From Ostrea edulis (Eukaryota): DNA of 64,000 nucleotides. The stretch spans positions 18,724,001 to 18,788,000 of the forward strand of contig NC_079172.1 of the NCBI RefSeq assembly GCF_947568905.1. Direction: 5' to 3'. The position numbers and the translations under genes were made by a program. The notes beneath the pieces were generated by a model. That model was not told the origin of the DNA and made no database searches. It saw only the letters and a program-made list of their open reading frames with translations. Below are positions 13,853 through 64,000 of the stretch, one piece after another (positions within the stretch are counted from its first letter, which is position 1; the number at the start of each line of letters is the position of its first letter).

Positions 13853-13917
13853 GTCAGTGACGTAAATGATGATGTGAGAAGAGTGGCAGTCACCTCCCTT
13901 GGGTTCCTATTATTCAG
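13853..13917 (+). CDS. PSMD1: PSMD1 internal exon: [21 protein letters not shown](R)
   Basis: TTTCTTTTTCAG| acceptor, AG|GTAGGT donor, 65 nt, phase 0/2. Matches human [22 protein letters not shown] (residues 607-628). Confidence 0.96.
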
Positions 13918-14059
13918 GTAGGTTGATAATTCTCAACCTCCCCATTTTAAGAGAATGAGGATGGGCCAATTTCTCTCTCCAATTTTTACGATCTACATGA
14001 TGACAGGCTGGTACTGATAAGCTACTGTCACTTTTACCCCATCCAAGGATGATACTACT

Positions 14060-14640
14060 TTTTGGGTCACCTGAATGACTCGGATGAACTATTGCTGTTG
14101 CTATTTGTCTGTTGTCATCCGTTGTTCGTCGTGCATTAACAAGTGAACAGTTTTGACTTTTTGATAAGTAGATCTACCCATCATTGGAACAATTTGGACA
14201 GAAATTGTAAATTTCAGGACTCCTGCACCCCAGGGGCCTAAGGGATGGGACAAAAACTACAATAAATTGACCTATTATGAAAGCTAAATGCATAGTCAAG
14301 TAGAACATGAAGGTTTCTACCAAAATTGTCAATTTTATGATTCCTGGGGTAGAGGTTCTGACTCCAGGGCAGGGCCAAACTTGTAGTGCATCTTGTGTTA
14401 ATGTGTAACTTTTCCAAAATTGTAAATTTCATGGTCCGAGCTAAGTGTAGGGGTTTTGGTACTAGGTTGGAACCAATATGGTCATAGTGATTAAATATGT
14501 TGTGTTCACAATTGAACATCTTTAACTTCTTCTTGATAACTTCCCTTCCAATTTTTTCAAATTTGATACAAAACATCTCTGGGACATGGGGGACATAAAT
14601 TGTGGAAATGCTTACATCATCATAATAATGTGGAAATGTT
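14060..14640 (+). mobile_element. 5' portion of a second Helentron-type family
   Basis: TTTTGGGTCACCTGAATGACTCGGATGAACTATTGC left end, GTC-rich tract, and internal CTACCAAAATTGTAAATTT...CAGGGCCAAA units shared with 19980-20422, 21040-21929 and 56350-57156. Confidence 0.65.
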
Positions 14641-16284
14641 TACATCATCACAAAAATGTGGAAATGCCAATGTCTGCAAAAGAATGTAGAAAGGCAAGAG
14701 TATAGAAATGCTAATGTCTTTGTCAGTACCAGTGATAAAAAAGCTGTTTATGTATATAGCAGTATTCCAGACCGATGGTAAACTAGAATTTGCATGAAAC
14801 TCAAAGGAGCGATGAAATTTTGTTGGTACTGTGTCTGGCATATTATTGTGTATTCATACTAAACACGAGTATGGAAAGCTCCCCGCGTTCTGGTCTCTAA
14901 CCTCTATTTGTTATATCTGAGTGACATTCCATCAATATGTGGAGAACTAATTGTGCATATAATGTATGTATACTAACTTAATGACACAAACAACCATGTG
15001 GTGAGGATTTCCTGGTGACTGACCACAGTAATGAGATCTGTCAGAGACTTCTCTCTCTGTTCTCAACAGATATCAGCTGTTCTGGTGCAGGCCAAGTGTG
15101 AACTTTTCAGACGGTCAGGTTTGATGAGGGAAACAATAAGTGAACCCAAACCTTCATAACTTACTTTTATCAATGCCATAAGCAACACATTTGCATATCC
15201 TTGTGGACTTAAAAGTACATGAATGTATAGTCATATTATATATATATATATATTAAAAGTGTATGAAATTTGAGAAAAGCACTAAAATACATGGAAGCAT
15301 GCGAGATTAGATATTGAGTGTAAAGTTCAACTTTGATTTATCCCAACTATCAAAATTTTCAAGATTGAAAACTATAGGGTAGTTTGATAATGATATAGTG
15401 CTGGAAATAGAGTATAATTACATTATGTGGCAATTGCATGATATAAAAAGAATAAGAACCTCTGTAGGACTCCGAACATATACGATACGTGTTTCATAAT
15501 ATATATTACATAATATATGTTACATGTTGAATGACAAATGAAATAAATACAGACAAGTGATTTTATCATTTCGATGTATGTATCCAATGGATTCTTTATG
15601 CAAATTAATAAAATACATTATTATACTTTCATGTAAAATACTCAAATCTGATTGTTTGAGAAGCATTTGAAAAAACATATTGTTACCCTCTGAGAACAGA
15701 AAGCACATGGTCCAGGGTAATAGTATCTAGCAACAGATGATATTATAAAAAATTATCACATGTGTCAAATTTATGCACATACGGTTCGCCGTAGATTGTT
15801 AGACAACGTTGTTTGAGTGTTTGTAATAAACGCACATACCCGCATTGATATATCAAATATCGCATGACAGTGATCGATCAAATGTTAACAGACATAAATC
15901 TTTCTGCTTTGTTGTTTATATAACATTCAGTACAATAAAACAAATATTGCATGTAGTTGACATGTTTTCTCAAGTTGAAAATTTTCAATGTTACCCTCAA
16001 CTACATGCAATATTTATATACTGTTTATCTTGGACAAAATTTCAATCATTGATGAAAAATATATAGATTTTTCTATATTGCATCACTTTTAGCATGTCTG
16101 GATTATGCATATGTTCTACTAAATGACCTCCATTTCTTTCATCAATAGTGGAAATTCACTTCTTTTTCCACAATATTGGCATACATTCTTTCATTTTCTT
16201 TTTGAGTTCATCCAGTCACTATGGTTTAGAATTGTCGACCCTGGGTCCTGTTTTACCAAACAACTTACGACAAAATTGCAAGTG

Positions 16285-16565
16285 TTAAAGGGACCAATTC
16301 AGGGTTTTTGATTTATTTTTTTTCATTTTTGATGTTGAACATTAAAGATATAACTCATTTAATGTTGACAGCCAAAATTTTGACCTTCAAAATGCAGGGA
16401 TAAGAGCAATATTTTAACCTTAACTCTGTGTTATGTAAACAAAGACTTGAGTCTTTTTATGTTTACAAACAAACCATGCAGTATGATGTTAATTTTTTGT
16501 GAAACCTTTTGAATTATTAAAAGTAAAAACAAATTTGGGGGAGAATCGTTAATCAGTCCCTTTAA
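16285..16565 (-). mobile_element. internally deleted TTAA-flanked (Kolobok-like) MITE
   Basis: TTAA|AGGGAC ... GTCCCT|TTAA termini; the body is the reverse complement of the right third of 17202-17725. Confidence 0.75.
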
Positions 16566-17201
16566 ATTGTATTACACAGTTATTAGTTTGAATGAATAAA
16601 AACTTTTCTGAGCTAGGCTTTAATTTTCAATTTAATTTTATCTAACTATTTTGCATTTGAGTGAATGATCTTACAATAAACAGGAAAATTCCTTTGTGTA
16701 AAGTTGTCCATAATTATATTCTTTTGAGAAACGCGTCCCTGTCTTATAGGAACCCCCAGAGAAAAAAGGTCTGATGGGTTGAAGTCTGGTGAATGAGGAG
16801 GCCAAGGACTATTGGTTCTTTAGGATATAACTTGTCCCCCAAACATTTCCTCCAACCAGTTAAAAACTGTAGGCTGTTGCTCCATCTTGTTGAAACCAAA
16901 TGGATTTTAGATCACCATACTTTCTGCGCAAGTTAGGCAAGAATTTTGTTCTCAACAAGTGGTGATAACACAGAGTTTGCTGTAGTGGTTTCTCTGCATG
17001 TTCTCAATCAGGAAAGGTCAAATAACTCCTTGTCATGACTACTTAACGCCGCCCACATACTTAGTTTTGAAGGCTTTTCTAGATCAAAATCTGGTTTTTT
17101 GGTTGACACATTCTGTTAATCCAAGTAAAATATCCAAATTCCCTGAAAAATGTCATTCCCATGTTACAGCTAGCATCCATCTTGCAAATTCAACTCAGTG
17201 T

Positions 17202-17725
17202 TTAAAGGGACTGATTCACGATTTTATCCAAAATTTTGTTTTTCACTTTAATGATCAAAATCTACTGTCTAATATGTTTGAAAGATTTCACATGAAAATT
17301 AAGGTTATACATCATCACAGAAGCTCATTTTAGAGAGTTTATTATTTGTTTTGTAAACAAAGATTGCGATATGTTATTGTTTACGGAATTTTCAAAAGAA
17401 ATGGATATCGATCTAAGTATTATTATATCTTTCATTTTTCAAGCATTTTTGGGGTGAAAAGTGTCATCTAAAAGTTAAAATTTGTGACTATGCAAAATTA
17501 AGATGCATTATATTACAAAATCAATATTTCACTTGTTTGTTTGTTTACATAAAAAGACTCAAGTCTTTGTTTACATAACACATATTTAAGGCTAAAATAT
17601 TGCTTTCATTCATGCATTCAGAAGGTCAAAATTTTGGCTGTCAACATTAAATGAGTTATATTTCTAATGTTTAACATCAAAAATGAAAAACATTTTTATC
17701 AAAAATCGTGAACCAGTCCCTTTAA
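17202..17725 (+). mobile_element. TTAA-flanked (Kolobok-like) MITE, 524 bp
   Basis: TIRs TTAAAGGGACTGATTCACGATTT / AAATCGTGAACCAGTCCCTTTAA; no ORF. Confidence 0.85.
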
Positions 17726-19979
17726 TATCTGATTCTTTGAGAAATTTTGTAGGTTGTCGATGTTGTATCATTTAAAGTTCTATATAAAATGATTGATTCC
17801 TGATAAGTTTGGGCAATTTGTGTTGATGATACAGTTTTACGATATCAGCCCATTGTTCCATAAATCCATTTTGGAAATATTTGAAATATATGACCTATAA
17901 CAAATAATTTTCCCAACTTTTCCCACATGGATAAAAATTCAGGATTTGGTAGTTGAATAGATATACATTTTGTATTAAAATTATGATAGATAAGAAAAAC
18001 ATTTTCACTTTAAAATGTAACAAATATTATGAAACATCCTGTATTAACAATGGATTACCAGTCCGATGTACACCTTGAACCGCAGAATATGTTAAAAAAT
18101 TGCTGACAGATTTATTCCTCCTGCTTACCGTGCCAGATAAAGGATAGACTCTTCAATCTAAAACGGGGTGGGTGGGTGTTGGTGTTTATGTCCCATTTGT
18201 AATCCACAACATTAGTTTTTTCTTCCTCTAGATTAAAAGAGTATATGATAGTATGATGGCGTAGCTAAGAACCCTTTTGAGTCCCTTTACTTTGTAATGA
18301 GAATCCAGGCGATACAGTGGCAGGAGACAAATTTCCCTCAGAAATTCAAAAGACAACGATAATTTGATAACGAGAAAATGTAAAAAATCTATTTGCCCTG
18401 CTTTGAAAGGCAATCCCCCCTATAAAACAACTTCTTGATAGTTTATGAATGAACATGCTTTGAAGAAGCCTGCTTTGCGTACGTGTCTCAATATCCTTGG
18501 GTTATCTTCAGAAATATTGGATGTCTGCGAAAGATTTTTGTGATTTACATTGATTTGACGTGTAGTAAATCAGAGTTTTGATAACGCATTGCAAGAGTAC
18601 AAATATTACATCACAATCTCAGAGTTTTTTTCTTTCCAAGAATGAAAGGATTAGATTAGATACTGTTTTACGAGTAATCAAGCCTAAACATTCAAAAAAC
18701 ATGAGGATGATTTCCTTCTCTCTTTTTTTCCGCGTTGTGGATGGAATTTGTGAATGGCAATTGGTTGATTGCATTTTGTGACGTTAGATTTATATAGGAC
18801 TTTAATGGAGTTATCATTTTGATTGTTGTTTTTATCAGCCAGTTTTAAGAACCTCAATTCACAAAAATAAATGCAAGTTGTGGATGTATTATCTTTGAAA
18901 TGAATCAGAGTTAGATAGGGCACTATTGAACAGATAAATGTCATGAATTCATGGGTATCAGAAATGAAATGAGCAAGTAAGAATTTTCATCTATTAGTAC
19001 ATGACTAATCATGAAAGTTGAGTAATGCTAGCAGTTCTATACTAGAACATTTGAGAAATGCCTGAGGACTTTGAAAAGAAAGATTTTTAGTAGGTTGAAA
19101 AAAGAGAAAGATAAATAATAGAATCCTCCATTAATTCAAGGGTGGGATTGGGAAATTCTATTGAGGAAATTTGTAGTTCAGGATGATCAAGGCTTTGCTG
19201 AGTTCTACCCTTACCAATATATAAGAAGCCCTGTGGCACACAGTTGCTGCAAATTTGTAGTGCACCTAATTTGCGGTGCATTTGCCACAAGGATATTTTT
19301 CGTATGTAAATTTTTTCTCTGGCAAAAAAGTTTGCGGTAAATTGTTGAATTGATGAAAAGATTTTGAGCTGTTGATTTCATTCTACTAAGATGCTACATT
19401 TCCTGAGGATGTTTTATCTAGAAATTCCCATTACATTTTGAATTGTTCCATTGGTTTGTCAGTGACTACATCATATAGAAAGCTTGTGCTTGCTTTCAAG
19501 GTTCTGAAAAACATGACACCAGAATATAAGTGTCAACCAAGTTAGTACTTGAACAACAAAAAGTAGTATATTATAAACAGTCTTTAAAGGTATCGTTTAC
19601 AATTGTATGGAATCAGTTGCCTGAGTATTTTAGTAAAATTCTGGACAGTTCTGCTATTTATATTTGTCAACTCCTGAATTTTGAAGCTTGAATAACCATT
19701 GTTTGACAGAGGTATAATTATTTCTTTCTGCTCAGTGGTCAAACTTTTTTCTATGAGGAGCCATCATTTCTATGCAGATGACAAAAGGTATAATTCAGAA
19801 ATAAACATAACAGTTGTAAAAATTTAGAAACTTTTATTCAATTAAAATTGAATTTGATAGGAATGTGTTTTAAGATGGAATTTTCCTTTCAACTTTCAAA
19901 CGGACATGTTTATACAAAGGACACTGCCTTTTGCAAACTCATTCATGGCCAACTACTGTATATGCAAGCATCTTCAGGT

Positions 19980-20422
19980 AGTGCAAATTCAAGTTTGTTC
20001 AATTCAGGGGCAAAGGGTGTAGGGTGGGGCCAAAATGGTCATAGGGACTTTGTCTTTATCATTAAAAGACTTCTTCAATTTTGCTGATACCGTATAAAAT
20101 AAATGGATATTTAGGAATAGCAGAATGTACATGTACCAAAATTATGAATTTTGCAACCCCTGGGGTTCGACAGTTGAGGCAGGTCCAAATCGTCATATAG
20201 TGTTAATATAACATTACATGTACATGTATATTATGTAAAGCCTTTCATCAGTAAAGGCACTTTCTGGAGCCTTTGTGGTTTAACTTCAGGACACACATTG
20301 TCTTATACTGCGGATGAATATTTGAATTTAGCTTTATAGATCAGGAGAATTTTGCTTGATTTCATAGTCCTTCAGGCTAGTGATATCCTTGGGTGACCTA
20401 TAAGGCCTGTGGGCATCTTGTT
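19980..20422 (+). mobile_element. 3' portion of Helentron-type element
   Basis: Ends GGGTGACCTATAAGGCCTGTGGGCATCTTGTT; collinear with 21500-21929. Confidence 0.65.
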
Positions 20423-21039
20423 CTGAATCCGCCCCCACCTTTATCATAACCCATATTATAGCCTCATGCAAACTGAAAACTGTCAGCTTCAAATGATTTC
20501 ATTTGTTGTCTTAACAAAATCAATATCGGATGTCCGAAAATTTTCGGAAGTTTTTACCCCTCCCCCAAACTTTGAATTCACATTTTTATCAGACATCATT
20601 CTTATTATCTCGCCACTAACAGAGATTAGTTCATATTGTTTGATATAATATGATATGATACTGTTAAGAACTGTTATATTGGTGAGGAAATTACTTTTTG
20701 ACAGCATTACCTCTCAATTGATTGAGATATGTGTATCATATAACATCACGAACATATAGAACTGGAGTCACATTCGACCATGTGTTAGATGTGTCTAGTT
20801 TCATTAGCACCTGCTTACCAATCGCCCACTGTCAGTTCCAGCTATGTATAATGAAATAAAAAAAATCATTTGGTAAACCAGCCATCAGTCACCTAGTGAG
20901 GCTGTGTCTCTGCACATTAATTACTGATGTACATTACTGCATGGGAAGAATGAAAATTGTTTAGTGAACTGCAATCAGCCCTTTACCAAATAAATTCCAT
21001 GATCCATGGAGTAGTGGTTTTGGTATTAGGGTGGGGCCA

Positions 21040-21929
21040 AAATGATCGGTGTTTGAATGTGTTAACAATTTAACATTTTTAACTCCTTCTTGATAACTGC
21101 CATTCCAATTCTTTTCAACTTCGTTATGAAGCATCTTTCGTACAAGGGGACATAAATTTTACATTTCAGGACTCCTGCACCCCCGTGGCCTTAATTGCAG
21201 GGCAAAATCTGCCAAATGTTTACCAATTTTCAAAAGTCATCTTCTCTACAATTGTATATCTCTAAGAAAACTAAATACATAGTAATGTAGAATATGAGGA
21301 CCTCTACCAAAATTGTTCTTGATCCCCAGGGTGGAGGTTCTGACTCCTGGGTGGGGCCAAACTTGGTATATATAGTGTATATGTGTAAAATATTCGAATA
21401 ATATCCTTGTTGCTATTGATACTAAATTGAAACTAAATGAATATTTAGAAGGAGTAAGGTAGTCTTCTACCAAAATTGTAAATTTCATAATCTTAGGGGT
21501 AAGGGTTTAATGGTTCCAGGATGGAGCCAAAATTATTATAGTGATTATTGCCTTTATCATTTGAAAGAATTCTTTAAGTTTGCTCAGATACAGTATAAAA
21601 ACTACATGCATATTTAGGAAAAGCAGAAAAAGATACCAAAATTTTAAATTCCACAACCCTAGAGTTAAATTGACTCCAGGACAGGTCCAAATTAGTCATT
21701 GTGTTTATGTTCCATATATTATGTAAAGCCTTTCATCAGTTAATAGGCACTTTCAAGGACATGTACATTAAGGTTTTAAGAACACATCTTTTTTTTATTC
21801 ATTTGCTGAATCTTGGAATTTAACTTCGATATTCAGAACAGGAAGTTTTTTCTAGATTTTATAGCCCTTGGTTCTAGTGATACTTTTAACTAATACTCAG
21901 GTGACCGATAAGGCCTGTTGGCCTCTTGT
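21040..21929 (+). mobile_element. Helentron-type element, 3' two-thirds
   Basis: Internal repeats as at 14200-14500; terminal CTCAGGTGACCGATAAGGCCTGTTGGCCTCTTGT stem-loop. Confidence 0.75.
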
Positions 21930-22133
21930 ATTATGCATCAAACCAAAGCACAGTTTACATTTTGAAATCTCTTATTTGCAAACAAAATACCTTTTTTTAT
22001 CAATCCAGAAAAAGCACAAAAAGTCATAAAAGTTCATATGAAATAATTGAGAGCTTGTATGAATCTTTCGATGGTGAAGTTAAGGTGCTTACACCTTTAA
22101 CAAGCCATGAAATAAAATTTTGGTGTAATGAGC

Positions 22134-22960
22134 CAGAGTTGTTGAAATTTTTAAATCACTGTCAGACATTTGGTCTGACAGAGTTAAAGATTCCGTCAGA
22201 CCGGACAAAGTTTTGTCAGACCAGATACATGTACCTTGTATTGCATAAAAAGAACAAAGAAAAAAGAACTGCACCAAAATGCCTTTTATTGTATCTCCCA
22301 CTCATAATATCCAGCCAAATATGGTCAGTTTTCCAACCATCTTGGAACTCCAGAACAACATGGAAGCCTTCGTAATTCTCTAAGTGGTCCAGGTTCAGCA
22401 TTTTTTCTTTTCTTAACAAGTTGTTTGTTTGTTTTCTGCCCCGTCAGAAATTTTCCCCTCATAATGAGACGTGACCAGCTGTAGGTGAAACACCACAAAT
22501 TTAGACCTATGCTTTGTACTTTGACTCAAGGCTGTTCTTTAATGTGTAATTTAAAACCTGCCGCAACATTGGAGGTCATATCCGAAAGACCTGTAACTCT
22601 CATCTCACTGCTAAATGCCGAGTGTTTGGCGAGGATATATTTAAATCTTAGGTTTGACGTGGCCATAGCACAAACATAACTCAAACTCACAACCTTCCAG
22701 TTACGAAGCGAACGGTCTACAACTGAGCTACCACGACCAGTCTTTTCTTCCTGGGTAGAGAACCTTTCATAAATTTGATCGGCCATTCGGCCATGTTTGA
22801 GTGACCTTCACTTGCGCATCTCGAACCCGAGCTCTAAAATAATCGGATCACACCCGATATTTTCAAACGGTCATTTGGACCAACATTTTCTTGAAATTTA
22901 TCGGTCCAGCGAAAATTTTGCCGGCCTTGCTGACAGGACCGACAGTTTTCGACAACTCTG
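22134..22960. mobile_element. hAT-like MITE interrupted by a SINE
   Basis: TIRs CAGAGTTGTTGAAA / TTTTCGACAACTCTG; near-TSD AATGAGCC vs AATAAGCC (7/8); GTCAGAC/GTCCG subterminal motifs. Confidence 0.6.
22421..22740 (-). mobile_element. tRNA-derived SINE
   Basis: The - strand head CTGGTCGTGGTAGCTCAGTTGTAGACCGTTCGCTTCGTAACTGGAAGG has an A box and a tRNA-Thr(CGT)-like anticodon loop, with a damaged B box; (AAAC)n tail at 22421-22432. The 3' body is shared with 28090-28300 and 57358-57476. Confidence 0.8.
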
Positions 22961-23214
22961 AATAAGCCACCTTAATGAGTATAATGTAAGAAGGCTGCAG
23001 AATTATTTGTCACCCCTTTATTGTTTGGGACACATCTATGTACAGCCCAAAATTGTGAAGTAATTCTTAACAAAGGATGATTTTTTGTGTTCATTGATTT
23101 TTGGAGAAGATAAGTCTTGAGTTCACTGACTTGATTTATGGAAAGTTGAACTTGACAGGTGTCTCATGAATTAATACAAATATCAATTACTCACATATAA
23201 GAAGGAATATTATA

Positions 23215-23400
23215 CAGTTATTGACTACATATTCCAAGGACAACAACTGTTTTGTTTGGCCCGAGAACAGATCTGTTGTCCGAAGCCGTAGGACGTAGCT
23301 GTAGGCTTCGGGCAACAGATCCATTCCAGGATCAAATGAAAAAGCTGTTGTCCGAGGACACTGTCTATAACTATTTTGTTACACACTTTCATTTTTTACT
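23215..23400. mobile_element. end of an unclassified palindromic MITE-like repeat
   Basis: 17-bp hairpin ATCTGTTGTCCGAAGCC (23271-23287) / GGCTTCGGGCAACAGAT (23304-23320) nested in further imperfect inverted segments. Confidence 0.5.
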
Positions 23401-23487
23401 AGATGCACATAGTTTGAAGTTGAAATTTTAAGAAGACAGTGAGCTTGTGTACATTCATCAACACATTAACTAGTTAAAAAGAAAACA

Positions 23488-40838: not shown

Positions 40839-40948
40839 TACATGCATTTTCATTTTAGTATTCATTTATCACACATGTAAAGTGTTGACAGAACAGAACT
40901 AGTAGACATTATACAAAAGATTGAGAGAGAGATATGTCGACAAATATA

Positions 40949-53183: not shown

Positions 53184-53269
53184 TATAGGCCATGCATGAA
53201 TAGGTTGATATGGTGTATTGGTCAACACAAGCGAAAAAAAAGTATTGACCTTATTACAGAAAATTATGG

Positions 53270-54712
53270 TAATACTCAGGTGACTGATAAGATGTGTTGT
53301 CTTCAGGTAGTGCAGATTGAAGTTTGTTCAAATCAATGCCTCGGGCCACAATATGGATTCATTTACATCGGAATATATATATATACATATATAGAAAAAA
53401 TAATGTAAAATCTTCTGGGAAAAACAGGGCCGTGATTAGTATGCATCTGTCAGAATCATTGTTAAAATCTTTGTCAATATCTCCAATTGAAAATTTTCTG
53501 GTGAGTTCATTGCAAAATTGCCAAATTATAAATCCTGAAAATAATAACCATTGTCATCTCAAACATGAGTCAGGTGTTCAGTTGAAAGTCTATCAGCTAT
53601 GATATGATATGATAGCTGCGGCAGCTGATAGAATGATTATGGTCAAGCCCTCGTGTAAATAATGCACATCCTCAAAGTTTGCTTAATTAATTTCTTTGGA
53701 AAAAATGCATGGAGCACCCCCAAAATTTTCTCAGAAAGAAAATGCTTGCCCTATGTTTATTTCACATAAAAAAGATAATGAAATGAAATAAAAATTCATA
53801 AATGAAAATGATAAATTAAAATGAATTTCTGTCTTATATTGCATGCTGATGTACTTTTCGTGCTAGCATACTTGAATATATAAATAAACACAAGCCTATC
53901 TGTTGTAATATTGTATCACACTGCTCTGGCTATGTGCAATTAATACGATGTCTTTCATTCAATTGAACACATTTCTAAACAGCTATCAAGATCACTTGAA
54001 CTTGGCTATCCCGTGTGTGCTGAGGTATGGCTGGTGATCGACTTAAGTACACTTGTACCAGAGAGTCAGTCTGCGGATTTTTTACAGAGTACTAGATTAA
54101 AGCCTCCAAGCATTCCAATACGCTATCTGAGTAAAATTGATATCCCTAGTTAGAAATGTTCTCAAGAACCACTGCAGTCATGATTTGTGAGCATTCCAAT
54201 GAAGTGTAGACTCATACTTGATCAAATCATATTCCATGGGACTAAAATAGGGATTTAAAGTTTTACATAAAAAATGTTTAGGAATCATATTGTTATGCAA
54301 GCTTTCCAAGGTGTGTGGATTGAAGTTTTTTTGGGGGGGAGGGGGGTGCTTCAAATTATGGACCCTGGGGTTACTAGGATTGGGAGATAATTGGGGAACA
54401 AACTTTTATAATTCATTAATAATTTTAATAATTCATGAATAAAGGGTAAAAAGAATTTTTTAAAAATATATATATAATTATATATCTTTTTCGGAACAGC
54501 ATGACTTTGTTAGGAATATTAATATCAATTAAAGCACTCATGTGTTGTGGATTCAAGTTTGCAGGTTAAGTCATGACCTAGGTCATAATTCGGAGTGAAA
54601 ATTGATCTGGGAATAAGGAAGTGGAATTTTTTTTACATGTTTAAAAAACTTCTAAAGATATACCAGGACTAAAGTAACTCTGGTGAGTGTTATGGCCCAT
54701 GGGCATTTTGCA
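53270..54712 (+). repeat. old Helentron-type / Cg170-like remnants
   Basis: GTGCAGATTGAAGTTTGTTCAAATCA and CTCAAGAACCACTG fragments; decayed right end TGGTGAGTGTTATGGCCCATGGGCATTTTG at ~54682-54711. Confidence 0.5.
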
Positions 54713-56349
54713 GCTTTCATATGTGTAGTAACCCCCAAATCTGAAAAATCCAGCCCCAAGTTACCCATCATGTTATCCTTTCTGCAGAAGCATTGGGGCT
54801 TTCAGATTACAGAAACTTATTTGACTGTAAAGTTTTCAATTCAAATAACTTTTGATGTCTTTGAGATGTAGCTTTCATAGTTGAAAGATGGATTTGTGAA
54901 TACTTACAAATTTTCTACTACTCTTGCTATTGTTTTGGCACTTGGTATTATTGGAAGAAGAAAAAATGAAGGTTATCCAAGTACTTTTTCTTAGTATTTG
55001 TTATGATGGTTGTGTACGTATGATTAGGTATTCATTTACAACAAAAGGTTGCACTAATTTCATTCTTATTAGAGACTAGAGTTCATTCACATCCTTTACG
55101 CGGCTTCAAGAATTTCCCATAAATAATTCCAAGGATAACTCTAACTGTTTTACATGCATACAGTTTTTGTGTTTTGTAGCCTGCAGGAAGTGGGGTTTTA
55201 TGGGGAATAAGATCAGTACTGGGTAATAACAAACTCAAACAGAATAGAGGCTACACTGGAGTGTAAATTTATCTCCTTAATAGTCCTGGAGTCCCACAGC
55301 TTGGATTTGTGCTTTGCGATCTCTTGGAATTGTAAACAGTGATTGGGGAACTTTGGGTCCTGTAGTCTGTTGATTTAATTGTTCTGTTGGTTATACTCAT
55401 TAAACTTTGGTTGCAAGGTTAGAAAATGTAAACATTTTTTTGTTCTTTTCTCTTTCACAAGTCTCTGTTTTTATCTTTTCAGTCTGAGAATAAACTTCGG
55501 TGAACTTATGTAAGCTTATGATCATCTGTAAGATATTACTGTAATGTTAGAATTCAATGTCATTTTACAGAAAATCTTTTGATAGTTTGTTCATATAATT
55601 CTCAGCATCTAGAAGAAAAACAAAACATATTCTGATTTGCCTGATTCTTGTAATTTCTGAGAAAAAGTTTTGATGACCATTATTTGCCGACACTTGTATG
55701 ATAGTTATATCACACAAGCTATCAGAAGGTAATATTCTGAATAAGAATAGACGAGGTAATGGACATTTATCTTGGCTATAACTTTTTAATGGAGAGACAG
55801 TATAGAAGCTTGATTACACACTGTCACAAAAGTTGCTGATGATTAGAGAGTGTGTGATATAACCTTGAATTAATGTCAGTTGCTCAAGGTCACAGTTACT
55901 GGTAAACTAATCAGAAATGTCTGTTCTAAGCTACTGTAGACGTATTTAATTTTGTTGTTTTTGTCATGAACACAATTTCATGTGAATTAATTTTCGTTGT
56001 TTGTGATTACTTAAAATTATGTATTAAACATACAAAGTATAAACAATGTCGCTTATCCGCAAGACTTGTTTAAACAATTTAAAAATATGATACGATACCC
56101 ACGTACGCCATTTATAAACCATTTGTTCGACAAAGCGTAATGTTGTTACATGTAGCACGTATTTACAAACAAATCCTCACTAGGTGATCCATGTAAGCCT
56201 TGGTCATTAGATTGTTGTACTCGAGCCATTACAATGTTGAAACCGTTTATATTGTGTTCTGTTCATCAATTTCGTTGATAAAATTCGTGAAGAAATCAGA
56301 TATATCGGTAAATACAAGGCTCGTGTCCTTTCCCTGCTCAATATAGGGA

Positions 56350-57156
56350 TTTTGATACCAAGGTGTGGCCAAAATGGTCATAGTGATGTGTCTGTTAACA
56401 ATTTTCCCTTCCAATTCCTTTCAAACTTCAAATGAAGCATCTTTAGGACAAGGAGGACATCAGTTGTAAATTTCAGGATTTCTGCACCCCTGGGGCCTTG
56501 GGGGCGAGATAAAAACTGCCCAAAATTGACCAATTTTCAAAAATCCTTTATCTACAACTACACACCTGTCAGAAAAACCAAATGCATAGTCATGTAGAGC
56601 AGGAAGGCCTCTACCAAAATCGTAAATTTCATGAACCTCGGGATTTATGTGTAAAAGAGTTAGATCTAAATGGATCTTGGTACCAAAATTGTAAATTTTG
56701 TGATCCCAGGGGTAGCGGTTTTGGTTCCAGGATGGGGCCAACATTATTATTGTGATTATTGTCTTGATTAATCAGTTGAAAGACTTCTTTAAAGCTGATT
56801 TCTTCTTTAATTTTGCTGATACTTTATTAAAACTAAATGCATATTTAGAAAAATCAGAAAAGGGTGTGCCACAATTGTGAATTTCGCAACCCTGGGATTT
56901 TGACTAGGGGAGGTCCAAAATAGCCATAGTATCAATATGACATATAATTATACTATATTTTGTATAGTCTTTCATCAGTTTGGACACCTTTGGGGGTATT
57001 TGTAAGAACACATATTGTTTTATACTGCTGCTGAATATTAAAATTTTGCTCAGATATCCAGAACAGGAAAATTATTCTAGATTTTATAGTCCTTGGGGCT
57101 AGTGATGCTTTTAATTAAAGCTCAGGCATCTGATAAGGTCTCTGGACCTGCATGTT
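56350..57156 (+). mobile_element. Helentron-type element, collinear with 21040-21929
   Basis: Shared internal units and a decayed right end CTCAGGCATCTGATAAGGTCTCTGGACCTGCATGTT. Confidence 0.7.
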
Positions 57157-57214
57157 GTTTGGTTTTAACATGAAGGAATACTGCAGTATCATAATATGTA
57201 TGTCCAGTGTTTCA

Positions 57215-57334
57215 TATTTTGCCTCAATTTCTTTTGTAGGTAAGTTTTCTCAATGTGAGTTTAGAAGAAAGGTCATAATTGAAAGTTATCCACCTTTCTT
57301 GACATTTTAAACAGATTGTCAAAAGCAGGTAAGA
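57215..57334 (+). other. candidate recursive splice site and 89-nt RS-exon in the long PSMD1 intron
   Basis: ATTTTGCCTCAATTTCTTTTGTAG|GTAAGT (junction 57239/57240) followed by a second donor CAG|GTAAGA (57328/57329). Motif evidence only. Confidence 0.45.
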
Positions 57335-57357
57335 TCTTATCTGTCTTCAGAATTAGA

Positions 57358-57476
57358 GATTGATTGATTGATTGTATCTTGCTTAACACCCCTCTCGAGA
57401 ATTTTTCACTCATATGGAGACATTACCAAGACCGATGAAGGGCTTCAAATTTGGGCCTTTGCTCGGCGCTTACGGC
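57358..57476 (-). mobile_element. 5'-truncated SINE 3' end
   Basis: (GATT)n tail followed by GAGAATTTTTCACTCATATGGAGAC...GGGCTTCAAATTTGGGCC, the same body as 22440-22520. Confidence 0.75.
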
Positions 57477-59436
57477 ACATATAATGGTACATATTGCGCC
57501 CATTGGAAGGTTATATAGTATGTTTTTATTATAAGATGTTTGTTTTTTTTTACATTGATTAGTAAACGCGGCAAAAATGTCAGGAGTTGTAGAACTTTAC
57601 TTTGTTTTGTATCATATGAATAAGGGAATTAGGCCAGCAATTTATTTACTGGTCTTTTGAATTTTCATATCTATTCAATATATGGTTTAACTTTTAATTT
57701 GTGGATCATAGGTTTTAATCTTGCAGAATTTGATTTTTTTTAATGTATAACATTAAAATGTATACCTTTGCAAGAGTTTATGCAAATTCTATTACATAAA
57801 CTCAATATTACATGAATGCAATACTTTCCTTTTTTGGTTCTCATATATCTCCTTAAACCTCCCCCAATAAGACATCCATAGTTGAGAAGCAAAATGCTTA
57901 CAATATGCTCATCTTCAAGTTGTTTACAAAAACTGGGCGCCACCAGATAACTGAAAAAATTGTTGAGTGTAGCGGAAGACATCAATCAATCAATCAACAA
58001 AGGCCATAGCTTTAAGACTGAGAGGATCGAGTCAAAAGGACTTGATTATATTTCCTTAAAACTGACTAAGTTCAATAACATGTTATTTTCTCAAAAATTG
58101 AAGGAAATCATCATCAATGCCCATACAAACAATCTGTAAAATACGAAGGTCCTCACTTGAAAATTGTGCCAGACAAATTATGTACCCTCCTAGAGTGACC
58201 CACAAATAAGCTACACAGCAAGTTTCAGCTTGGTATGTTACAGATATGAAAATAGACACAGAAAACCCTGAATGGACGGACGGACAGACATCGCTGTACC
58301 ATAATACATCCCATCTAAAGACATGATACATTGTATTTCATAATTCAGTGTGTAATGACATTGACAGCATCTTCATTTTGTTTCCTGCAGAATATACATG
58401 GTGCTTGTATCACTTTTTTGTCTGTCTGTCAGTCTGTGTGGAGATACACTTGTAGGCAACACAATGATCCTATGAATTCCTTGTGTAAATGAAGAAAGAC
58501 TACTTTTATCACATGGTTAATCATGGCAACTTGAAAAAGAATTTACAAGAAGCAGCCCAACATGGTGTTATCAGTGAAGGTGTCAGTGTGTCTGTGTTGT
58601 GGTGATGTGATGTGAGGCTGGATGGGCACAGTAACAGACCACCCATTTACTTTCAGATATATTGAGAATCAAATTATTGTGCATTGTTCTTCCTAATGAT
58701 ATTTAATCTATAATGAAAAGATACAGAATATCTCTGTGTGTATTTTACACTGCAGAGGATGAAGATTTCTGGAGCTTATTGTTTTTGCAAGCAGGGTCTG
58801 TCGGCTCTTATGTCAACATCTTTAACCACGATCACTGCTTTGAGCTATACAGGAATGACACCTTTATGAAATCATTTTCTGTCCTGCTTTGGTGACTGCA
58901 TTTGTTAATGGGAAAGGACTATGTAGCTTCATTTTATTTTTTTTTACTCCTTTTTCAACTTTGCTTATTATTTCAACTTTGGTATTATAAATATTTTTAT
59001 TCTTTGAAACCCTGAATTAAAATAAAAAATAAAATACAGTACTAATGATAGAAACACAAATCATTATGAATCTCACACCTCTAATTACTGAAATTAGTCA
59101 TTTTGGGTCAGCTATGGAACACAGGATGAGATGTGACGATTATATAATTAGGTTTAATTACCAATGCATGCCAAATGCACATTTTGTTGTTATATCGATT
59201 TTCATTACAGGGAAATGAATATCATCATGTTATATTTAGATTCCAACATTATTATTGGTATGAAAAACTTTAAAATGCAGTGATTCATTTGACAATAATT
59301 GGAAATGACATGACAATGCCACTGATATAGAGGTCACAATACCAGTCTGATTATGTTAAAAGAAGCATCAAAGGCTATTCCATGGCTGTTCCAACATGTT
59401 GACTAATGAACAAGAAGACTACTAGAAATTGGATTA

Positions 59437-60859
59437 CAGTGGAACCCCGTTATAACATTTCCCCTTTATTACGTTAGTCCGCATATTGCGTTGGAATTTC
59501 AAAGCACAAAACTGTTTCTTAACAAACCTATATAAAATAGACCTCGTTATTACGTTGTCCCAAGATGCCGGGACTCAGTATTATGTTGTAAAAATTCTGA
59601 CAAAAACATAATAAATTAAACTCCTAATTATTCAATAGTGATTCTCAAAATAATAAGCCATTCACACCTTGACTGCCCCAGGCAGTCACCTTGTTTTCCT
59701 AGTCTGTTAGGGGATTAGAGACGCTTGACTGGTCATGCTTTGATAGATCTAGTGACATCCATAGGGGTGAATGAATACCCTGTCTTGAAGCCAGTGATAA
59801 GCAATTAAATGATGTTTATTTAGAAATTGTACTCAATAAAATTTTCTTCATTTTTCATATTTTGACGATCAAAGAAATAATAATTTCTCAACCACATGCA
59901 TGTTTAGCATTGTGTGATTGCTTTCGATATTAAAACTCTTATTTACGGACAGCTTTGGTACCAAACATGTAGGACCAAATTTCTCGTCTCACAGTTTAAA
60001 CAGCTTGGGTTGGCTTGGATATAGTTAGGTGACTAAAGGCAGTGTTCAATTTAAAAAATTGTCAGTTAGTTTGACATAATAGCTTGGGTGTTGTTAGATC
60101 TCATCCATAAATACGCCGATCAAACTGCACAGTGTTATCGGCCGATTCGTGCACGGCTTTTAGCTCAGTGAACATTTTAAAATTCCTTGATATTTTTGTT
60201 AATGTGCATGTGATTTTAGTGCCATCATTTAGTGTTATAAATGTGATCTTAATATTAGTGCATTATTATTTTTTAAAAAGTGGATTGCGTTTGTTCTCCG
60301 TGTTTATCGTTGGTGAAAAAGTGTGTATAAGTGTTAGATATCGCGTGCATTTTGTGTCGTAGTTTTGTTGTTTTTTGGGTGGGATTTTTAAAATTGTGTT
60401 TTATATCGTGTAGTAGACATATAATTTAATAAAAACAATGTTTTGTTATTTTTTGTTTTATGTACAAATGTTGAATACGAAGCGGAAAGAGTTATTGAGA
60501 GAAATTTATATGAACGCATTTTGTTAAAGTTGAACAAAATGGCGGAAACGAAAGCAGATAAGGAATGCTTATCAAAGCATCCTTATGTATCCTACACAAG
60601 AAATAAAGAAAAGGGATGAGAACATTAAGAATTACGGACATTTAAGATAAGATGTAAATAAATCAAGTGTCATTTAAACAAAGAAACAGTAGAGAAATAT
60701 TCACACACACACACACCCCTTCACTGAGTATCAATGGAAGATATGCAATTTCCAAATGATATTTTTAACGGATTTCACTGGCAACGTGTATTACGTTGCC
60801 CCCAGTATTACGTTATTTTATCATGACAAAATGAGAAACGTAATAACGGGGTTCCACTG
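59437..60859 (-). mobile_element. TA-flanked non-autonomous pogo/Tigger-like element, 1423 bp (copy 2, inverted relative to 40949-42383)
   Basis: Same TIRs and TA flanks; the body is the reverse complement of copy 1 along its length, roughly 85-90% identical by eye. Confidence 0.92.
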
Positions 60860-63416
60860 TATTACCACGACACCTATAAATATATCACATAGAACTAACT
60901 GGGTTTTTTTTAAATCCCACCAATGTGCCTGGTGAGTACAGTCAATTTCAACCCGTTTTCAGGATCTTTATTTGGAAATTTATACTGGTATGGTGATACC
61001 TCAAGCCCTATAGTTTTATTTTTGCTTTCGCAGTCCAGGTGGTATTTAAGTTTCAAAATAATGTCCTTAGAACAAAAGTTAACAATGTGAAAAGAAACTC
61101 GATTGTACTAAAAATAATGAGACGAAAGGACAACAAAAATATAAGAGAATTAGGAAATAATTAGATTTCTGTAGAGAATGTGTAACTGCTAACATTCACC
61201 CAGGATTTTTTAGTGAAGGAAGCTGTGTAGCAAATTCACTTGTTTGTATTGCTCATTAAGAGGTTAATGAAAAAATCAGTAGGAGAGTGGATTGCTCCAA
61301 AAAGGTGATTTGTTGTACAGACAAATGTCATAGTTTCATGTAATCATTCATATCTTCATCTACATGATTTGTGTTTATCATTTCTATACCTTCCGATTAA
61401 CACATGTATTAATATCTAATATTTACACAGGTAATATGATTGATGGTTTTGAAGACAATGGTCCTTTCCTTTTTCTTGCTTCTACCTTAAATCTCTCTGT
61501 TGCAACCAATCTGCGATATCTACTGTGGATTTAGAATTCTATGTATCTACTCCCCAATCATTTGACAGTATAGCTAAATGTTAATTTAAACAATGACAGC
61601 ATGTGGATTTTCAAATTTAGTTAGATTTAGATCTACTTCCTATTGTTTTTCTTTTTCACCTTCAAGGCATCAGTTCTTTCCTAGCAACATTGGTTGATTG
61701 GGGGGGTTTAATGCCGTATTGGCAATATTTTAGCTATTTTATGGAGGTTAGCTAAATAAAGTATGATTGGTTTTGAAGAGTGTTGTAGCATAGGAGTTAA
61801 ACAGAATAGATATACAGTATATATAGCAATAGTATCGTTGTCACCTCATTTCAGTACTTTCAGTACTTTGATTTTTAATAAATTTATTGAGTTAATCATA
61901 ATACTGTGCAACAGTGTGTAGCGAAAGACGCCAAAAGATGACCACTTTTAAAACAAGCAGAGATCTTTTGTAACTGTAATGTTTATAAAAGAAATCTGAA
62001 GGATCCCAACATTATCTCATAATAAGTGGTATCTCTAGATATTTTATCTCATTTTAAATGAAGTCCACTGTATATTGATTGAGTTGAGAAATCATGTACG
62101 TTAAGTTATTGCGTAAAAAAAATATCCGTTCTATAAATATTTGAAGTGCATAGAAATTCTAATGTTATCAGATTTTCATCCCACTCTCAAAGCAATTACT
62201 GATAAACACTGTGTTTTTTCAGATTGTTTTCATTGACTTTCCTCTCAATTTACTTATTTCTAAGTATTTTGTTGATTCAGATGTGTTTGTGAATTACTTT
62301 TGATTAACATTGATTGGTTAGACATGTTGCAAACTTCATTTTACCTCATGTGGATTCTCTTACATACAGGAAGTCGAGAAGAATTATCTTTTATCTTGAT
62401 TTGTTGTTCTGAGGGGATATTTTTTTGCAATAAAAAGAGATGTGAAATAGACATTTTCTGATATAAAATTTTTCTCAACTTTACAATGAAAATGTGAAGA
62501 ACAACAGTATAATGGGGAAAATAACAAGTAATTGAAAACTGTTGAAATAAAGTACTACAGTGGAGCTTCGTTAATCTGGACACTTGGGTTCCTTGCAAAT
62601 CATCAGTAGGATGGTTAACTGATTGCATGTATCTTCATATATTTGTAATCAATGTGCTTGCTTCTTTGATATGTGATATGAAATACACATTAACAGTTTT
62701 CTTTTTTACCATATTTTCCCGAATATGATAAGTAGTTATGTTTAATATGCCCACCCCATCCCATTTTGCGTCTGATACACAGTATTAACAGAAAGAACAA
62801 AAATTCTAAAACATATTGTTTGGTTATTAAGATAGCATGTCATTTACATTGAAACATGCATATTCAGTAAAACAAATACATTTTTGATCTGAAATGTTTA
62901 TTCTATCACAGCTCAGGTTAATCAACTCATGAAGTATACTGTATATAAATTTCAAGTCTGTGACAAATATATTGCAACAAGTATTTGAAGCACTCTCTGT
63001 ATTATTGTACATTTATTTTAGATAGGACAATTATGACAGTACATAAATTATATAATATACCAAAATGAATAATCATAAAACAATTAAGAGACAAAAATTC
63101 TTAAGGACAAAAAAAAATGGATGTATGGGTTGATATCAATTTTATGGCTTAATTAGTTTGGTTTTAATAAGTACAAAAGTACAAAATTCCTTAAATGCTA
63201 GGGGACTTCATTCTTTTAAATCTTCATTTTTTAAAATTCTATTGTCAAAAGTTATTGAAATCTATAACAAATTTTCCCCACTGTACTTATAGTCATTTAG
63301 AACTCATGGGAATGCATTATATTCCATATGGTAATTTGTATTCATTTTACTCATAACAACATGAATTTAGTTTTCATTTTCTAATAAAGTTTGTTTGCAG
63401 AACTCTTGATTCAAAT

Positions 63417-63510
63417 GATCGCATAGGATGAAACTAAGGAAACCAGTCTCAGTTCCGTCAATAGATCGCATAGGATGAAACTAAGGAAACCAGTCCCAGT
63501 TCTGTCAATA
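63417..63510. repeat. 47-bp direct tandem duplication in the 3' UTR region of receptor paralog B
   Basis: GATCGCATAGGATGAAACTAAGGAAACCAGTC(T/C)CAGTTC(C/T)GTCAATA twice, at 63417 and 63464, with two mismatches. Confidence 0.9.
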
Positions 63511-63618
63511 GTTACTAGTTATAACATCCTATATGTTCTACTGTTTCCAACTGCTGCTGGTCGTAATCCACAGTGCTGATTATCATCGCCTTTCTCCATT
63601 TTGTTTTTATTGCAACAT

Positions 63619-64000
63619 TTAACATGGCGTTTCACACTTATCAATACTGTTGTTGGAGTCTGATCCGTTGTGGTAAAAAGACCCATTACTGACCATCCAG
63701 CTCTGGACTCTCTGTTTCCTCTGAATACGGTCATAGCGACACAACAGTAATTTCTTGAAGGTCATTTTGAAGGTCTTGTTAAACATGGTGTAGATAATTG
63801 GATTCAGGGTACTGGACACATACCCCAACCAGTTGAAGGATGCATACAAAGCTGCTTTAAAATTGCAGTCTTGACAAAGCGGTGTCATGATGTTGAGAAT
63901 GAAGAATGGAGCCCAACACACAACGAAGATGACGAATACAATTCCTATGACTTTAGAAGCCTTCTTCTCAGTGTGAACATCATCTAGCTTCTGAATATGA
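63619..64000 (-). CDS. HTR2: second 5-HT2-type serotonin receptor (paralog B), partial: end of ICL3, TM6, TM7, C-tail; 5' part lies outside the window
   Basis: Frame open from the window edge: HIQKLDDVHTEKKASKVIGIVFVIFVVCWAPFFILNI...FNWLGYVSSTLNPIIYTMFNKTFKMTFKKLLLCRY...CETPC-stop. EKKASKV, CWAPFF..N6.55 and FNKTF..LLCRY are 5-HT2 family signatures. Confidence 0.85.
   Translation of the reverse strand, partial: HIQKLDDVHTEKKASKVIGIVFVIFVVCWAPFFILNIMTPLCQDCNFKAALYASFNWLGYVSSTLNPIIYTMFNKTFKMTFKKLLLCRYDRIQRKQRVQSWMVSNGSFYHNGSDSNNSIDKCETPC

What the first reader, a model, noticed from the sequence alone, without database searches (positions are those of the whole stretch)
13853..64000. 5-HT2 receptor genes nested antisense in the same PSMD1 intron as human HTR2B: an apparently pan-bilaterian nested locus
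Seen: PSMD1 exons stop after a 65-nt exon ending in phase 2 of the Arg in LGFLLF-R; no further PSMD1 exon appears for >50 kb; two 5-HT2-type genes lie on the opposite strand in that gap. Established: human HTR2B is nested antisense in a large PSMD1 intron. From memory, that intron follows c.1883, which is phase 2 of Arg628 after a 65-nt exon, i.e. the identical position (to be verified). Inference: the nesting predates the mollusc-vertebrate split, HTR2B marks the ancestral 5-HT2 locus, and something has preserved the arrangement, such as shared enhancers, open chromatin from the housekeeping host, or antisense coupling. I do not know whether this has been reported for molluscs.
Basis: partly seen in the sequence, partly recalled or inferred. 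Interest (0 to 1): 0.9.

Follow-up and report, generated by a model that had tools for sequence, protein, structure and literature searches.

The report
Serotonin receptor genes nested in PSMD1
In this oyster, two serotonin (5-HT2-type) receptor genes lie backwards inside one intron of the proteasome gene PSMD1, at exactly the codon where a bird keeps HTR2B and a starfish keeps its 5-HT2 gene. The arrangement was therefore inherited from early bilaterian animals, although amphioxus and an annelid have lost it.

Summary
The window matches the Ostrea edulis PSMD1 protein at 100%. It carries four PSMD1 exons on the + strand. The last (13853-13917) is 65 nt, matches human residues 607-627, and ends after two bases of the Arg codon. 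RNA contigs splice 8099>13853 and continue past 13917 into (R)TPEQCPQVV, which is not in the window.

Receptor A (37878-37587 + 31801-29520, 857 aa) and the last exon of receptor B (63619-64000+) lie on the opposite strand. Both fall inside a strongly supported 5-HT2 clade.

In pigeon the same 65-nt exon and the same phase-2 intron (28.5 kb) host HTR2B. In the starfish Acanthaster the same intron (14.5 kb) holds an unannotated, intact 5-HT2 gene. PSMD1 also encloses two opposite-strand GPCR genes in a gastropod and a horseshoe crab, where the intron and receptor type could not be checked.

"Pan-bilaterian" overstates it. Amphioxus and the annelid Owenia keep the intron (about 210 and 480 nt) but it is empty.

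No evidence supports active preservation; passive entrapment in an essential host gene is the simpler explanation. I rate it a new member of a known kind, like synapsin-TIMP. Other first-stage readers of this scan noted the same locus in this and the adjoining window.

The parts
7104..7154 (+). PSMD1 exon (..DIYEQLKFNLYQDDAVTG)
   Evidence: ag|..|gt boundaries read. tblastn with O. edulis PSMD1 P0336.
7379..7455 (+). PSMD1 exon (G-EAAGIAMGLVMLGTKQSTAIEDMVA)
7884..8099 (+). PSMD1 exon, matches human residues 535-606
   Evidence: E 5e-39 to human PSMD1. 100% identical to P0336. The donor at 8099 is used in RNA contigs.
13853..13917 (+). PSMD1 65-nt exon ([21 protein letters not shown] + AG of Arg). 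It matches human residues 607-627 and is the last host exon before the nest.
   Evidence: RNA joint 8099>13853, and a loose end behind 13917 encoding (R)TPEQCPQVV. Pigeon has the same 65-nt exon with the same phase.
13918..64000 (+). Host intron of PSMD1 (phase 2, inside the Arg codon). It runs off the window end.
   Evidence: No downstream PSMD1 exon is present in the window. The annotated O. edulis gene extends to about window coordinate 119162.
37587..37878 (-). 5-HT2 receptor A, coding exon 1 (N-terminus, TM1-TM2). It ends ..VELF + G, a phase-1 donor.
29520..31801 (-). 5-HT2 receptor A, coding exon 2 (TM3-TM7 with a very long third intracellular loop, plus the stop codon)
   Evidence: The joined CDS gives 857 aa, the length of the annotated nested product. 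Placed in the lophotrochozoan 5-HT2 clade at 100/100.
63619..64000 (-). 5-HT2 receptor B, last coding exon (end of the third loop, TM6, TM7, C-terminus). The gene continues beyond the window.
   Evidence: Placed in the mollusc 'short' 5-HT2 clade (100/98), next to Sinonovacula 5-HT2-3. Annotated as a 540-aa product at window-equivalent 63619-72609.
37879..38467 (-). Block conserved with Saccostrea just upstream of receptor A's ATG (likely 5'UTR or promoter)
   Evidence: blastn of the window against Saccostrea locus L001; the match is collinear.
33155..34866 (.). Two collinear conserved non-coding blocks (33155-33402 and 34668-34866) inside receptor A's own intron
28385..28679 (-). Conserved block downstream of receptor A's stop codon (likely 3'UTR)

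Best explanation
This is an inherited, homologous nested locus. The bilaterian ancestor already had a 5-HT2-type receptor gene in antisense orientation inside one specific PSMD1 intron: the phase-2 intron that splits the Arg codon of ..LGF(I/L)LF-R|TPEQ.. (human Arg628).

The oyster keeps that state with two tandem paralogues. A is the long lophotrochozoan type. B is the short type that is sister to insect 5-HT2 genes. Vertebrates keep one guest, HTR2B. Starfish also keep one.

Host and guest are independent transcription units. PSMD1 is spliced across the guests, and each receptor has its own exons and flanking conserved blocks.

The most likely reason for persistence is an inference, not something shown here. 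It is structural entrapment. A rearrangement that separates the genes needs two breakpoints inside this one intron, or a retrocopy of the guest. Any other break destroys an essential proteasome gene. The receptors' own regulatory DNA inside the intron would add to that inertia.

Retention is not obligatory. Amphioxus and Owenia have emptied the intron, and it collapsed to a few hundred bases.
For: The donor and acceptor context is identical in five phyla-level lineages (..TTC AG|gt...ag|N ACN CCT GAG CA). The intron sizes and contents are:
- oyster: more than 50 kb, two guests;
- pigeon: 28.5 kb, HTR2B;
- Acanthaster: 14.5 kb, an intact unannotated 5-HT2 gene;
- amphioxus: about 210 nt, empty;
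- Owenia: about 480 nt, empty.

The guest is always on the opposite strand.

Two opposite-strand 7tm_1 genes lie inside PSMD1 in Ostrea, the gastropod Babylonia (one of them matches A-type P0035 by length and contig) and the horseshoe crab Tachypleus.

All sequenced guests fall in one 5-HT2 clade, separated from D3, alpha-1, alpha-2 and 5-HT1A-like receptors at 100/99. Their best solved-structure matches are all 5-HT2A/B/C.

Oyster A, pigeon HTR2B and the starfish guest share a phase-1 intron right after TM2 (..F|G..).

The host is expressed and spliced across the nest.

In seven further species PSMD1 and a 5-HT2 gene sit on contigs of identical length: Lineus, Tubulanus, Bradybaena, Mya, Mactra, Patella vulgata and Babylonia.
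Against: - The human exon table itself was not examined. Equivalence rests on pigeon DNA plus human protein numbering. It also rests on papers that assign one SNP and one CpG to both PSMD1 and HTR2B (PMC5562334, PMC7579899).
- For Tachypleus and Babylonia, neither the intron nor the receptor type (apart from the Babylonia 855-aa gene) could be checked, because no DNA was returned.
- The next oyster PSMD1 exon was not seen, so B's presence in the same intron is inferred.
- The outgroup sampling of the tree is limited.
- Nothing here measures selection, so 'passive entrapment' versus 'regulatory constraint' is unresolved.
Confidence: 0.75

Rival explanations
1. The nest is ancestral but actively maintained by selection. 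Host and guest would be functionally coupled. Possible couplings are receptor enhancers interdigitated with PSMD1 exons (a genomic regulatory block with PSMD1 as bystander), permissive chromatin from a constitutively transcribed host, or antisense transcriptional interference that sets receptor levels.
For: The arrangement has survived in at least three phyla at the same intron. Collinear conserved non-coding blocks lie around and inside receptor A between Ostrea and Saccostrea. Cis-regulatory constraint is the published general explanation for ancient microsynteny (PMC3514665).
Against: The conserved blocks lie next to or inside the receptor gene, not among PSMD1 exons. Amphioxus and Owenia lost the nest yet keep a normal PSMD1. 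Lingula has an intronless A-type gene with no host called over it. No expression, chromatin or contact data were available.
Confidence: 0.2
2. Convergence: 5-HT2 genes entered PSMD1 independently in molluscs, echinoderms and vertebrates, for example because this intron is large and tolerant of insertions.
For: The distribution is patchy, being absent in amphioxus and Owenia. Large introns do collect insertions.
Against: The same guest family sits in the same orientation in the same one of at least 21 host introns, at the identical codon and phase, in three phyla. The intron is small when empty, so its large size is a consequence of the guest and not a cause. The guests share their own intron position.
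Confidence: 0.03
3. Artefact: a truncated PSMD1 pseudogene copy, or a misassembly that places receptor genes between PSMD1 exons.
For: None beyond the fact that the window ends inside the intron.
Against: RNA contigs splice out of 13917 into the next PSMD1 exon. The annotated 981-aa product runs from RPN2_N to RPN2_C. An independent assembly of another oyster genus shows the same nest.
Confidence: 0.01

Closest known systems
Vertebrate PSMD1-HTR2B nested locus (human chromosome 2q37; checked here in pigeon)
   Same: Same host orthologue, same 65-nt exon, same phase-2 intron in the Arg codon, and a guest of the same receptor family on the opposite strand.
   Different: The oyster intron holds two tandem paralogues (A long type, B short type), whereas vertebrates hold one. 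The oyster guest has one coding intron where pigeon HTR2B has two. The oyster intron is more than 50 kb against 28.5 kb in pigeon.
Synapsin-TIMP nested locus (PMC2825198; Pohar et al. 1999, cited there)
   Same: A guest gene lies in reverse orientation in an intron of an unrelated host. The arrangement is conserved from invertebrates to human, has lineage-specific losses (nematodes) and has lineage-specific guest duplications inside the intron.
   Different: The genes are different. In that case the host is tissue-specific and the guest is broadly expressed. Here the host is a housekeeping proteasome subunit and the guest is a neuronal or peripheral GPCR.
Ancient metazoan microsynteny and genomic regulatory blocks (Irimia et al. 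2012, PMC3514665)
   Same: Unrelated neighbouring genes stay together across phyla.
   Different: That model explains linkage by enhancers of a developmental gene lying in a bystander gene. No such enhancers are shown here. Whether this pair is in their list could not be checked, because no supplement is held.
Cholinergic gene locus (VAChT inside the first intron of ChAT; from general knowledge, not checked here)
   Same: A deeply conserved nested pair involving neurotransmission genes.
   Different: That guest is in the same orientation as its host and shares promoter and function with it. Here the guest is antisense and functionally unrelated to the host.

Membership tests
5-HT2 receptor family (receptor A) | Closer to 5-HT2A/B/C than to any other aminergic receptor of known structure | tested here: met
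   The top 29 PDB sequences are all 5-HT2A/2C/2B (201-173 bits). The next is D2 at 148 bits. Exon 1 gives the same ranking.
5-HT2 receptor family (receptor A) | Falls inside the clade of vertebrate 5-HT2A/B/C and invertebrate 5-HT2 receptors, to the exclusion of other amine receptors | tested here: met
   The 5-HT2 clade has 100/99 support. A lies in a lophotrochozoan subclade at 100/100 (quick tree). The outgroups were limited to D3, alpha-1, alpha-2 and 5-HT1A-like receptors.
5-HT2 receptor family (receptor A) | Shared gene structure: a phase-1 intron immediately after TM2 (first extracellular loop) | tested here: met
   Oyster ..CTC TTT G|gt, pigeon HTR2B ..TTA TTT G|gt and starfish ..ATT TTT G|gt. 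That other amine-receptor families lack this intron is from general knowledge and was not tested.
5-HT2 receptor family (receptor A) | Binds serotonin and signals through Gq | not testable with these tools
   The sequence shows the TM3 Asp (..WVTTDVL..), DRY and NPxxY motifs. No pharmacology is available.
5-HT2 receptor family (receptor B) | Phylogenetic placement in the 5-HT2 clade | tested here: met
   The 127-aa fragment groups with an oyster-like partial protein (99/96). It lies within the mollusc short 5-HT2 clade (100/98) with Sinonovacula 5-HT2-3 and Mercenaria, and that clade is sister to insect 5-HT2 (94/94). Only 27% of the alignment columns are filled.
5-HT2 receptor family (receptor B) | Best matches among solved structures are 5-HT2 | tested here: inconclusive
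   5-HT2A, 5-HT1B and D2/D3 all score 63-65 bits on the TM6-TM7 fragment.
PSMD1 / Rpn2 (host) | Orthologous sequence and full RPN2_N - PC repeats - RPN2_C architecture | tested here: met
   (human residues 535-627). The annotated 981-aa product has all domains and its exons are 100% identical to the window.
PSMD1 / Rpn2 (host) | Transcribed and spliced across the nest | tested here: met
   Joint 8099>13853, and a loose end at 13917 that reads into the next exon.
Ancient conserved nested gene pair | Same intron (position and phase) of orthologous hosts in distant phyla | tested here: met
   Oyster, pigeon and Acanthaster have occupied introns. Amphioxus and Owenia have the same intron empty.
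Ancient conserved nested gene pair | Guests are orthologous or co-orthologous and in the same relative orientation | tested here: met
   The guest is on the opposite strand in every case.
Ancient conserved nested gene pair | Present in all three bilaterian superclades | tested here: inconclusive
   Lophotrochozoa and Deuterostomia are shown at intron level. For Ecdysozoa there is only Tachypleus: two opposite-strand 7tm_1 genes inside the PSMD1 range, with the intron and receptor type unseen.
Ancient conserved nested gene pair | Universal among bilaterians ('pan-bilaterian') | tested here: not met
   Amphioxus (11-kb gene) and Owenia (12.5-kb gene) contain no receptor.

The most novel reading that the evidence does not exclude
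The nest is functional, not just a frozen accident. Constitutive PSMD1 transcription through the antisense 5-HT2 genes, or enhancers shared within the intron, would set where and how much receptor is made. That coupling would have been selected for more than 550 million years. The lineages that emptied the intron would have rewired 5-HT2 regulation, for example through retrocopies such as the intronless Lingula gene.
Probability: 0.12. Interest if true: 0.85.

Novelty: new member of a known kind. Interest (0 to 1): 0.6.

Why it matters
The locus gives a positional marker for 5-HT2 orthology that does not depend on sequence, across phyla where automatic names are chaotic. The same oyster-type gene is labelled dopamine D2-like, octopamine-like, tyramine-like or 5-HT2A in different genomes.

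It shows that HTR2B, not HTR2A or HTR2C, sits at the ancestral address.

It also adds a clean, base-exact example to the very short list of nested gene pairs conserved across Bilateria. Natural 'knock-outs' of the nest (amphioxus, Owenia) sit alongside occupied states, which makes the question of passive entrapment versus regulatory coupling of nested genes testable.

Finally, it exposed an unannotated 5-HT2 gene in the Acanthaster assembly.

Tried and rejected
- Literature: nine searches combined HTR2B, 5-HT2, serotonin receptor, PSMD1, Rpn2, nested, synteny and microsynteny. They found only SNP, CpG and expression tables that list both genes. Two apparent hits concerned PSMD14 and Psmd11. 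No supplement of Irimia 2012 is held.
- The ESM Atlas search with the B fragment returned only generic rhodopsin-type clusters.
- PDB ranking could not classify the B fragment.
- No orthologue of B was among the first 107 receptor hits. It was found only in the third protein search.
- Look-ups of the Mizuhopecten receptor and Ptychodera PSMD1 failed because they are not on record.
- The Saccostrea locus holds no PSMD1 exon and no B exon within 10 kb of receptor A. It therefore confirms the nest but not the intron.
- The misassembly or pseudogene reading was rejected by RNA and by a second genus.
- Convergent insertion was rejected on the identity of position, phase, orientation and guest gene structure.


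Full report
WHAT IS IN THE WINDOW

The window contains no N. Its PSMD1 exons are 100% identical to the Ostrea edulis PSMD1 protein P0336.

Four PSMD1 exons lie on the + strand: 7104-7154, 7379-7455, 7884-8099 and 13853-13917.
- The third exon aligns to human PSMD1 residues 535-606 (E 5e-39).
- The fourth aligns to residues 607-627.
- The fourth exon is 65 nt, flanked by ag and gt, and ends with the first two bases (AG) of an Arg codon.
- In human numbering that is codon 628, position 2, or nucleotide 1883.

A sensitive tblastn with the C-terminal 345 residues of P0336 finds nothing in the rest of the window.

RNA-derived contigs from two public runs contain the joint 8099>13853 (GT..AG, with the whole 65-nt exon on one side). 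They continue behind 13917 as A ACC CCT GAG CAA TGC CCT CAA GTG GTA, which encodes (R)TPEQCPQVV. This is exactly how P0336 continues, and the sequence is absent from the window. The donor at 13917 is therefore real, and the next exon lies more than 50 kb away.

THE GUESTS

Receptor A lies on the minus strand in two coding exons: 37878-37587 and 31801-29520.
- Joined, they give an 857-aa open frame. This is the length of the first nested product in the NCBI annotation of O. edulis.
- Both exons hit Pfam 7tm_1.
- Against all solved structures, the best 29 sequences are all 5-HT2A, 2C or 2B (201-173 bits). The next is D2 at 148 bits.

Only the last exon of receptor B is in the window (63619-64000, 127 codons, running off the end).
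- On that fragment 5-HT2A, 5-HT1B and D2 score alike, so the window alone cannot name it.
- It has no orthologue among the A-type hits.
- It is 67-69% identical to short mollusc receptors, including Sinonovacula '5-HT2-3'.

A careful maximum-likelihood tree of 45 sequences (a 64-row quick tree agrees) gives these results:
- A 100/99 branch separates a 5-HT2 clade from D3, alpha-1, alpha-2 and 5-HT1A-like receptors.
- Oyster A lies in a lophotrochozoan 'long' subclade (100/100).
- The B fragment lies in a mollusc 'short' subclade (100/98) that is sister to insect 5-HT2 receptors (94/94).
- The outgroup sample is limited. The PDB ranking, which covers all amine receptor classes, points the same way for A.

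THE NEST IS REAL

The O. edulis annotation gives PSMD1 a range of about 150 kb. It has two opposite-strand 7tm_1 genes, of 857 and 540 aa. Their coordinates map onto the window to the base with an offset of 33562. This places A at 29520-37878 and B at 63619-72609.

In another genus, Saccostrea echinata, the A orthologue lies inside a 983-aa gene that runs from RPN2_N to RPN2_C on the other strand. A truncated copy or a misassembly is therefore excluded.

That B shares A's intron is very likely, because no PSMD1 exon lies between them. It is not proven, because the next exon is outside the window. Another first-stage note on the adjoining window (s1-274694) makes the same claim, and I could not test it.

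THE SAME INTRON ELSEWHERE

Pigeon PSMD1 (955 aa, locus L004) has an exon at 19158-19222.
- The exon is 65 nt, encodes [21 protein letters not shown] plus AG, and is followed by gt.
- The next exon starts at 47784 with G ACT CCT GAG CAG TGT.
- The 28.5-kb intron between them holds a 463-aa opposite-strand gene.
- The last exon of that gene scores 308 bits to human 5-HT2B, against 167 bits for 2C and 166 bits for 2A.
- Exon size, codon, phase and orientation are therefore the same as in the oyster.

I did not see the human exon table. For the human nest itself, two papers list a SNP and a CpG as belonging to both genes (PMC5562334; PMC7579899).

In the starfish Acanthaster planci the intron at the same site is 14.5 kb, the largest in a 30-kb gene. 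No gene is annotated in it. tblastn nevertheless finds an intact two-exon aminergic receptor on the opposite strand (L007, about 16278-16015 and 15094-14025).
- Its best 29 PDB matches are all 5-HT2 (171-154 bits), followed by 5-HT1A at 147 bits.
- It groups with Patiria and Asterias '5-HT2-like' proteins in an echinoderm 5-HT2 clade (98/96).

The splice context is the same in all five species read..TTC AG|gt ... ag|N ACN CCT GAG CA.

Oyster A, pigeon HTR2B and the starfish guest also share their own phase-1 intron directly after TM2 (..TTT G|gt).

At the level of gene ranges, two opposite-strand 7tm_1 genes also lie inside PSMD1 in two further species:
- the gastropod Babylonia areolata (855 and 785 aa, host range 231 kb). 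The 855-aa product matches A-type P0035 by length and contig;
- the horseshoe crab Tachypleus tridentatus (691 and 479 aa, host range 243 kb).

No DNA was returned for these two. The intron, and for Tachypleus the receptor type, remain unchecked.

WHERE IT IS NOT

- Amphioxus PSMD1 is 11 kb and Owenia PSMD1 is 12.5 kb. Neither has a nested gene or any receptor-like sequence.
- Both still have the intron at the same codon and phase, but it is only about 210 and about 480 nt long.
- The Lineus A-type receptor has the same two-exon build, but no host gene is called over it and no PSMD1 exon lies within 10 kb. It sits on a contig of the same length as Lineus PSMD1.
- The Lingula A-type gene is intronless and lies at a contig end.

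The arrangement is therefore ancient and widespread, but not universal.

HOW IT MOST LIKELY WORKS

Shown:
- The host and the guests are separate transcription units on opposite strands.
- The host is spliced across the guests.
- The locus is homologous between mollusc, echinoderm and vertebrate.

Inferred:
- The bilaterian ancestor had at least one 5-HT2 gene in this intron.
- A tandem duplication into A and B types is older than the mollusc-insect split, because B-type includes insects. It may explain the two guests in Tachypleus.
- After the vertebrate genome duplications, only the HTR2B copy kept its host.

For persistence I favour passive entrapment. A nested gene can leave only by two breaks within the same intron or by retroposition. 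Any other break would inactivate an essential proteasome subunit.

The receptors' own control regions lie inside the intron. Collinear Ostrea-Saccostrea conserved blocks occur at 28385-28679, 33155-33402, 34668-34866, 37879-38467 and 39108-39295, and these add inertia.

They are also not supported by anything measured here, and the clean losses in two lineages show that the coupling is dispensable. When the guest is gone, the intron shrinks to ordinary size. The intron's great length is therefore a consequence of the guest, not a pre-existing property.

COMPARISON AND NOVELTY

Deeply conserved nested pairs are a known kind. The textbook case is TIMP, which lies in reverse orientation inside synapsin from cnidarians to human, with lineage-specific losses and guest duplications (PMC2825198).

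The vertebrate PSMD1-HTR2B overlap is visible in any genome browser. I found no paper in the library that reports this nest outside vertebrates or notes the identity of the intron. Large microsynteny lists such as Irimia et al. 2012 may include the pair, but their supplement is not held.

I rate it a new member of a known kind. It is solidly documented and useful as an orthology anchor for 5-HT2 genes. It is also useful as a natural experiment on nested-gene retention, but it does not change concepts.

Other first-stage readers of this scan flagged the same locus in this window and the adjoining one (s1-287579, s1-274694).

Noticed in passing
L007:14025-16321 (Acanthaster planci, minus strand): An intact 5-HT2-type receptor gene lies in the PSMD1 intron, but no gene is called there in the collection's annotation. 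An N-terminal-looking ORF (16076-16321, MSTAPSISSPTLPLNATPP..) is in a different frame from the TM1 exon ORF (15976-16278). This suggests a frameshift or sequencing error, or a different start. The locus also contains 797 N.
   Followed up: partly
L002:1462-3927 (Lingula anatina): The A-type 5-HT2 receptor is encoded without any intron (821 aa contiguous). It lies at a contig end with no host gene called over it. It may be a retrocopy, which is one route out of the nest.
   Followed up: partly
Babylonia areolata proteins P0028 and P0396: Besides the nested pair inside PSMD1, a second A-type gene (1029 aa) and a B-type gene (614 aa) both sit on another contig of 40,932,569 bp. This looks like a duplicated A-B pair whose host copy may have been lost, mirroring vertebrate HTR2A/2C.
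   Followed up: no
window 13853 (acceptor); L005, L006, L007: The intron upstream of the 65-nt exon, between ..LLHVA and VSDVNDD.., is present in oyster and pigeon. It is absent in amphioxus, Owenia and Acanthaster, where HVAVSD is contiguous.
   Followed up: partly
window 12368-12566 and 13562-13850: Contig word depth is enormous in all four runs, up to millions, which indicates highly repeated elements. The second element abuts the PSMD1 exon and creates the spurious 99-aa ORF 13622-13921, which fuses repeat sequence to the exon. Related repeat ORFs occur at 14238-14576 and 56460-56744.
   Followed up: no
window 1-1100: A tandem array with a period of about 128 bp lies in an upstream PSMD1 intron. 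It is visible as a repeated translated motif, PTVIKLCQLMGLACSKG.DQKVGHLDLLLE.
   Followed up: no
window 48220-48852 (-): A 210-aa ORF with no Pfam hit lies between the two receptors. It resembles ORF fragments of mobile elements common in bivalve genomes; that resemblance is from memory.
   Followed up: no
window 8027 and 8048: The RNA contigs of runs X1 and X2 (organism A) differ from the window at these two exon positions (C>A and A>G). The DNA-like runs (organism B) match the window. This probably reflects a different strain or a close species.
   Followed up: no
window 57372-57488: This stretch matches Saccostrea L001 22945-23061 at 73% but out of collinear order. It lies next to the site that another reader called a recursive splice site (s1-287647). 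It may be a repeat or a moved conserved element.
   Followed up: no
(database names): Orthologues of receptor A carry contradictory automatic names: 5-HT2A, tyramine/octopamine receptor-like, dopamine D2-like, D(2) dopamine receptor-like and octopamine receptor-like. Crinoid members of the echinoderm 5-HT2 clade are named D(2)/D(3) dopamine receptor-like.
   Followed up: partly
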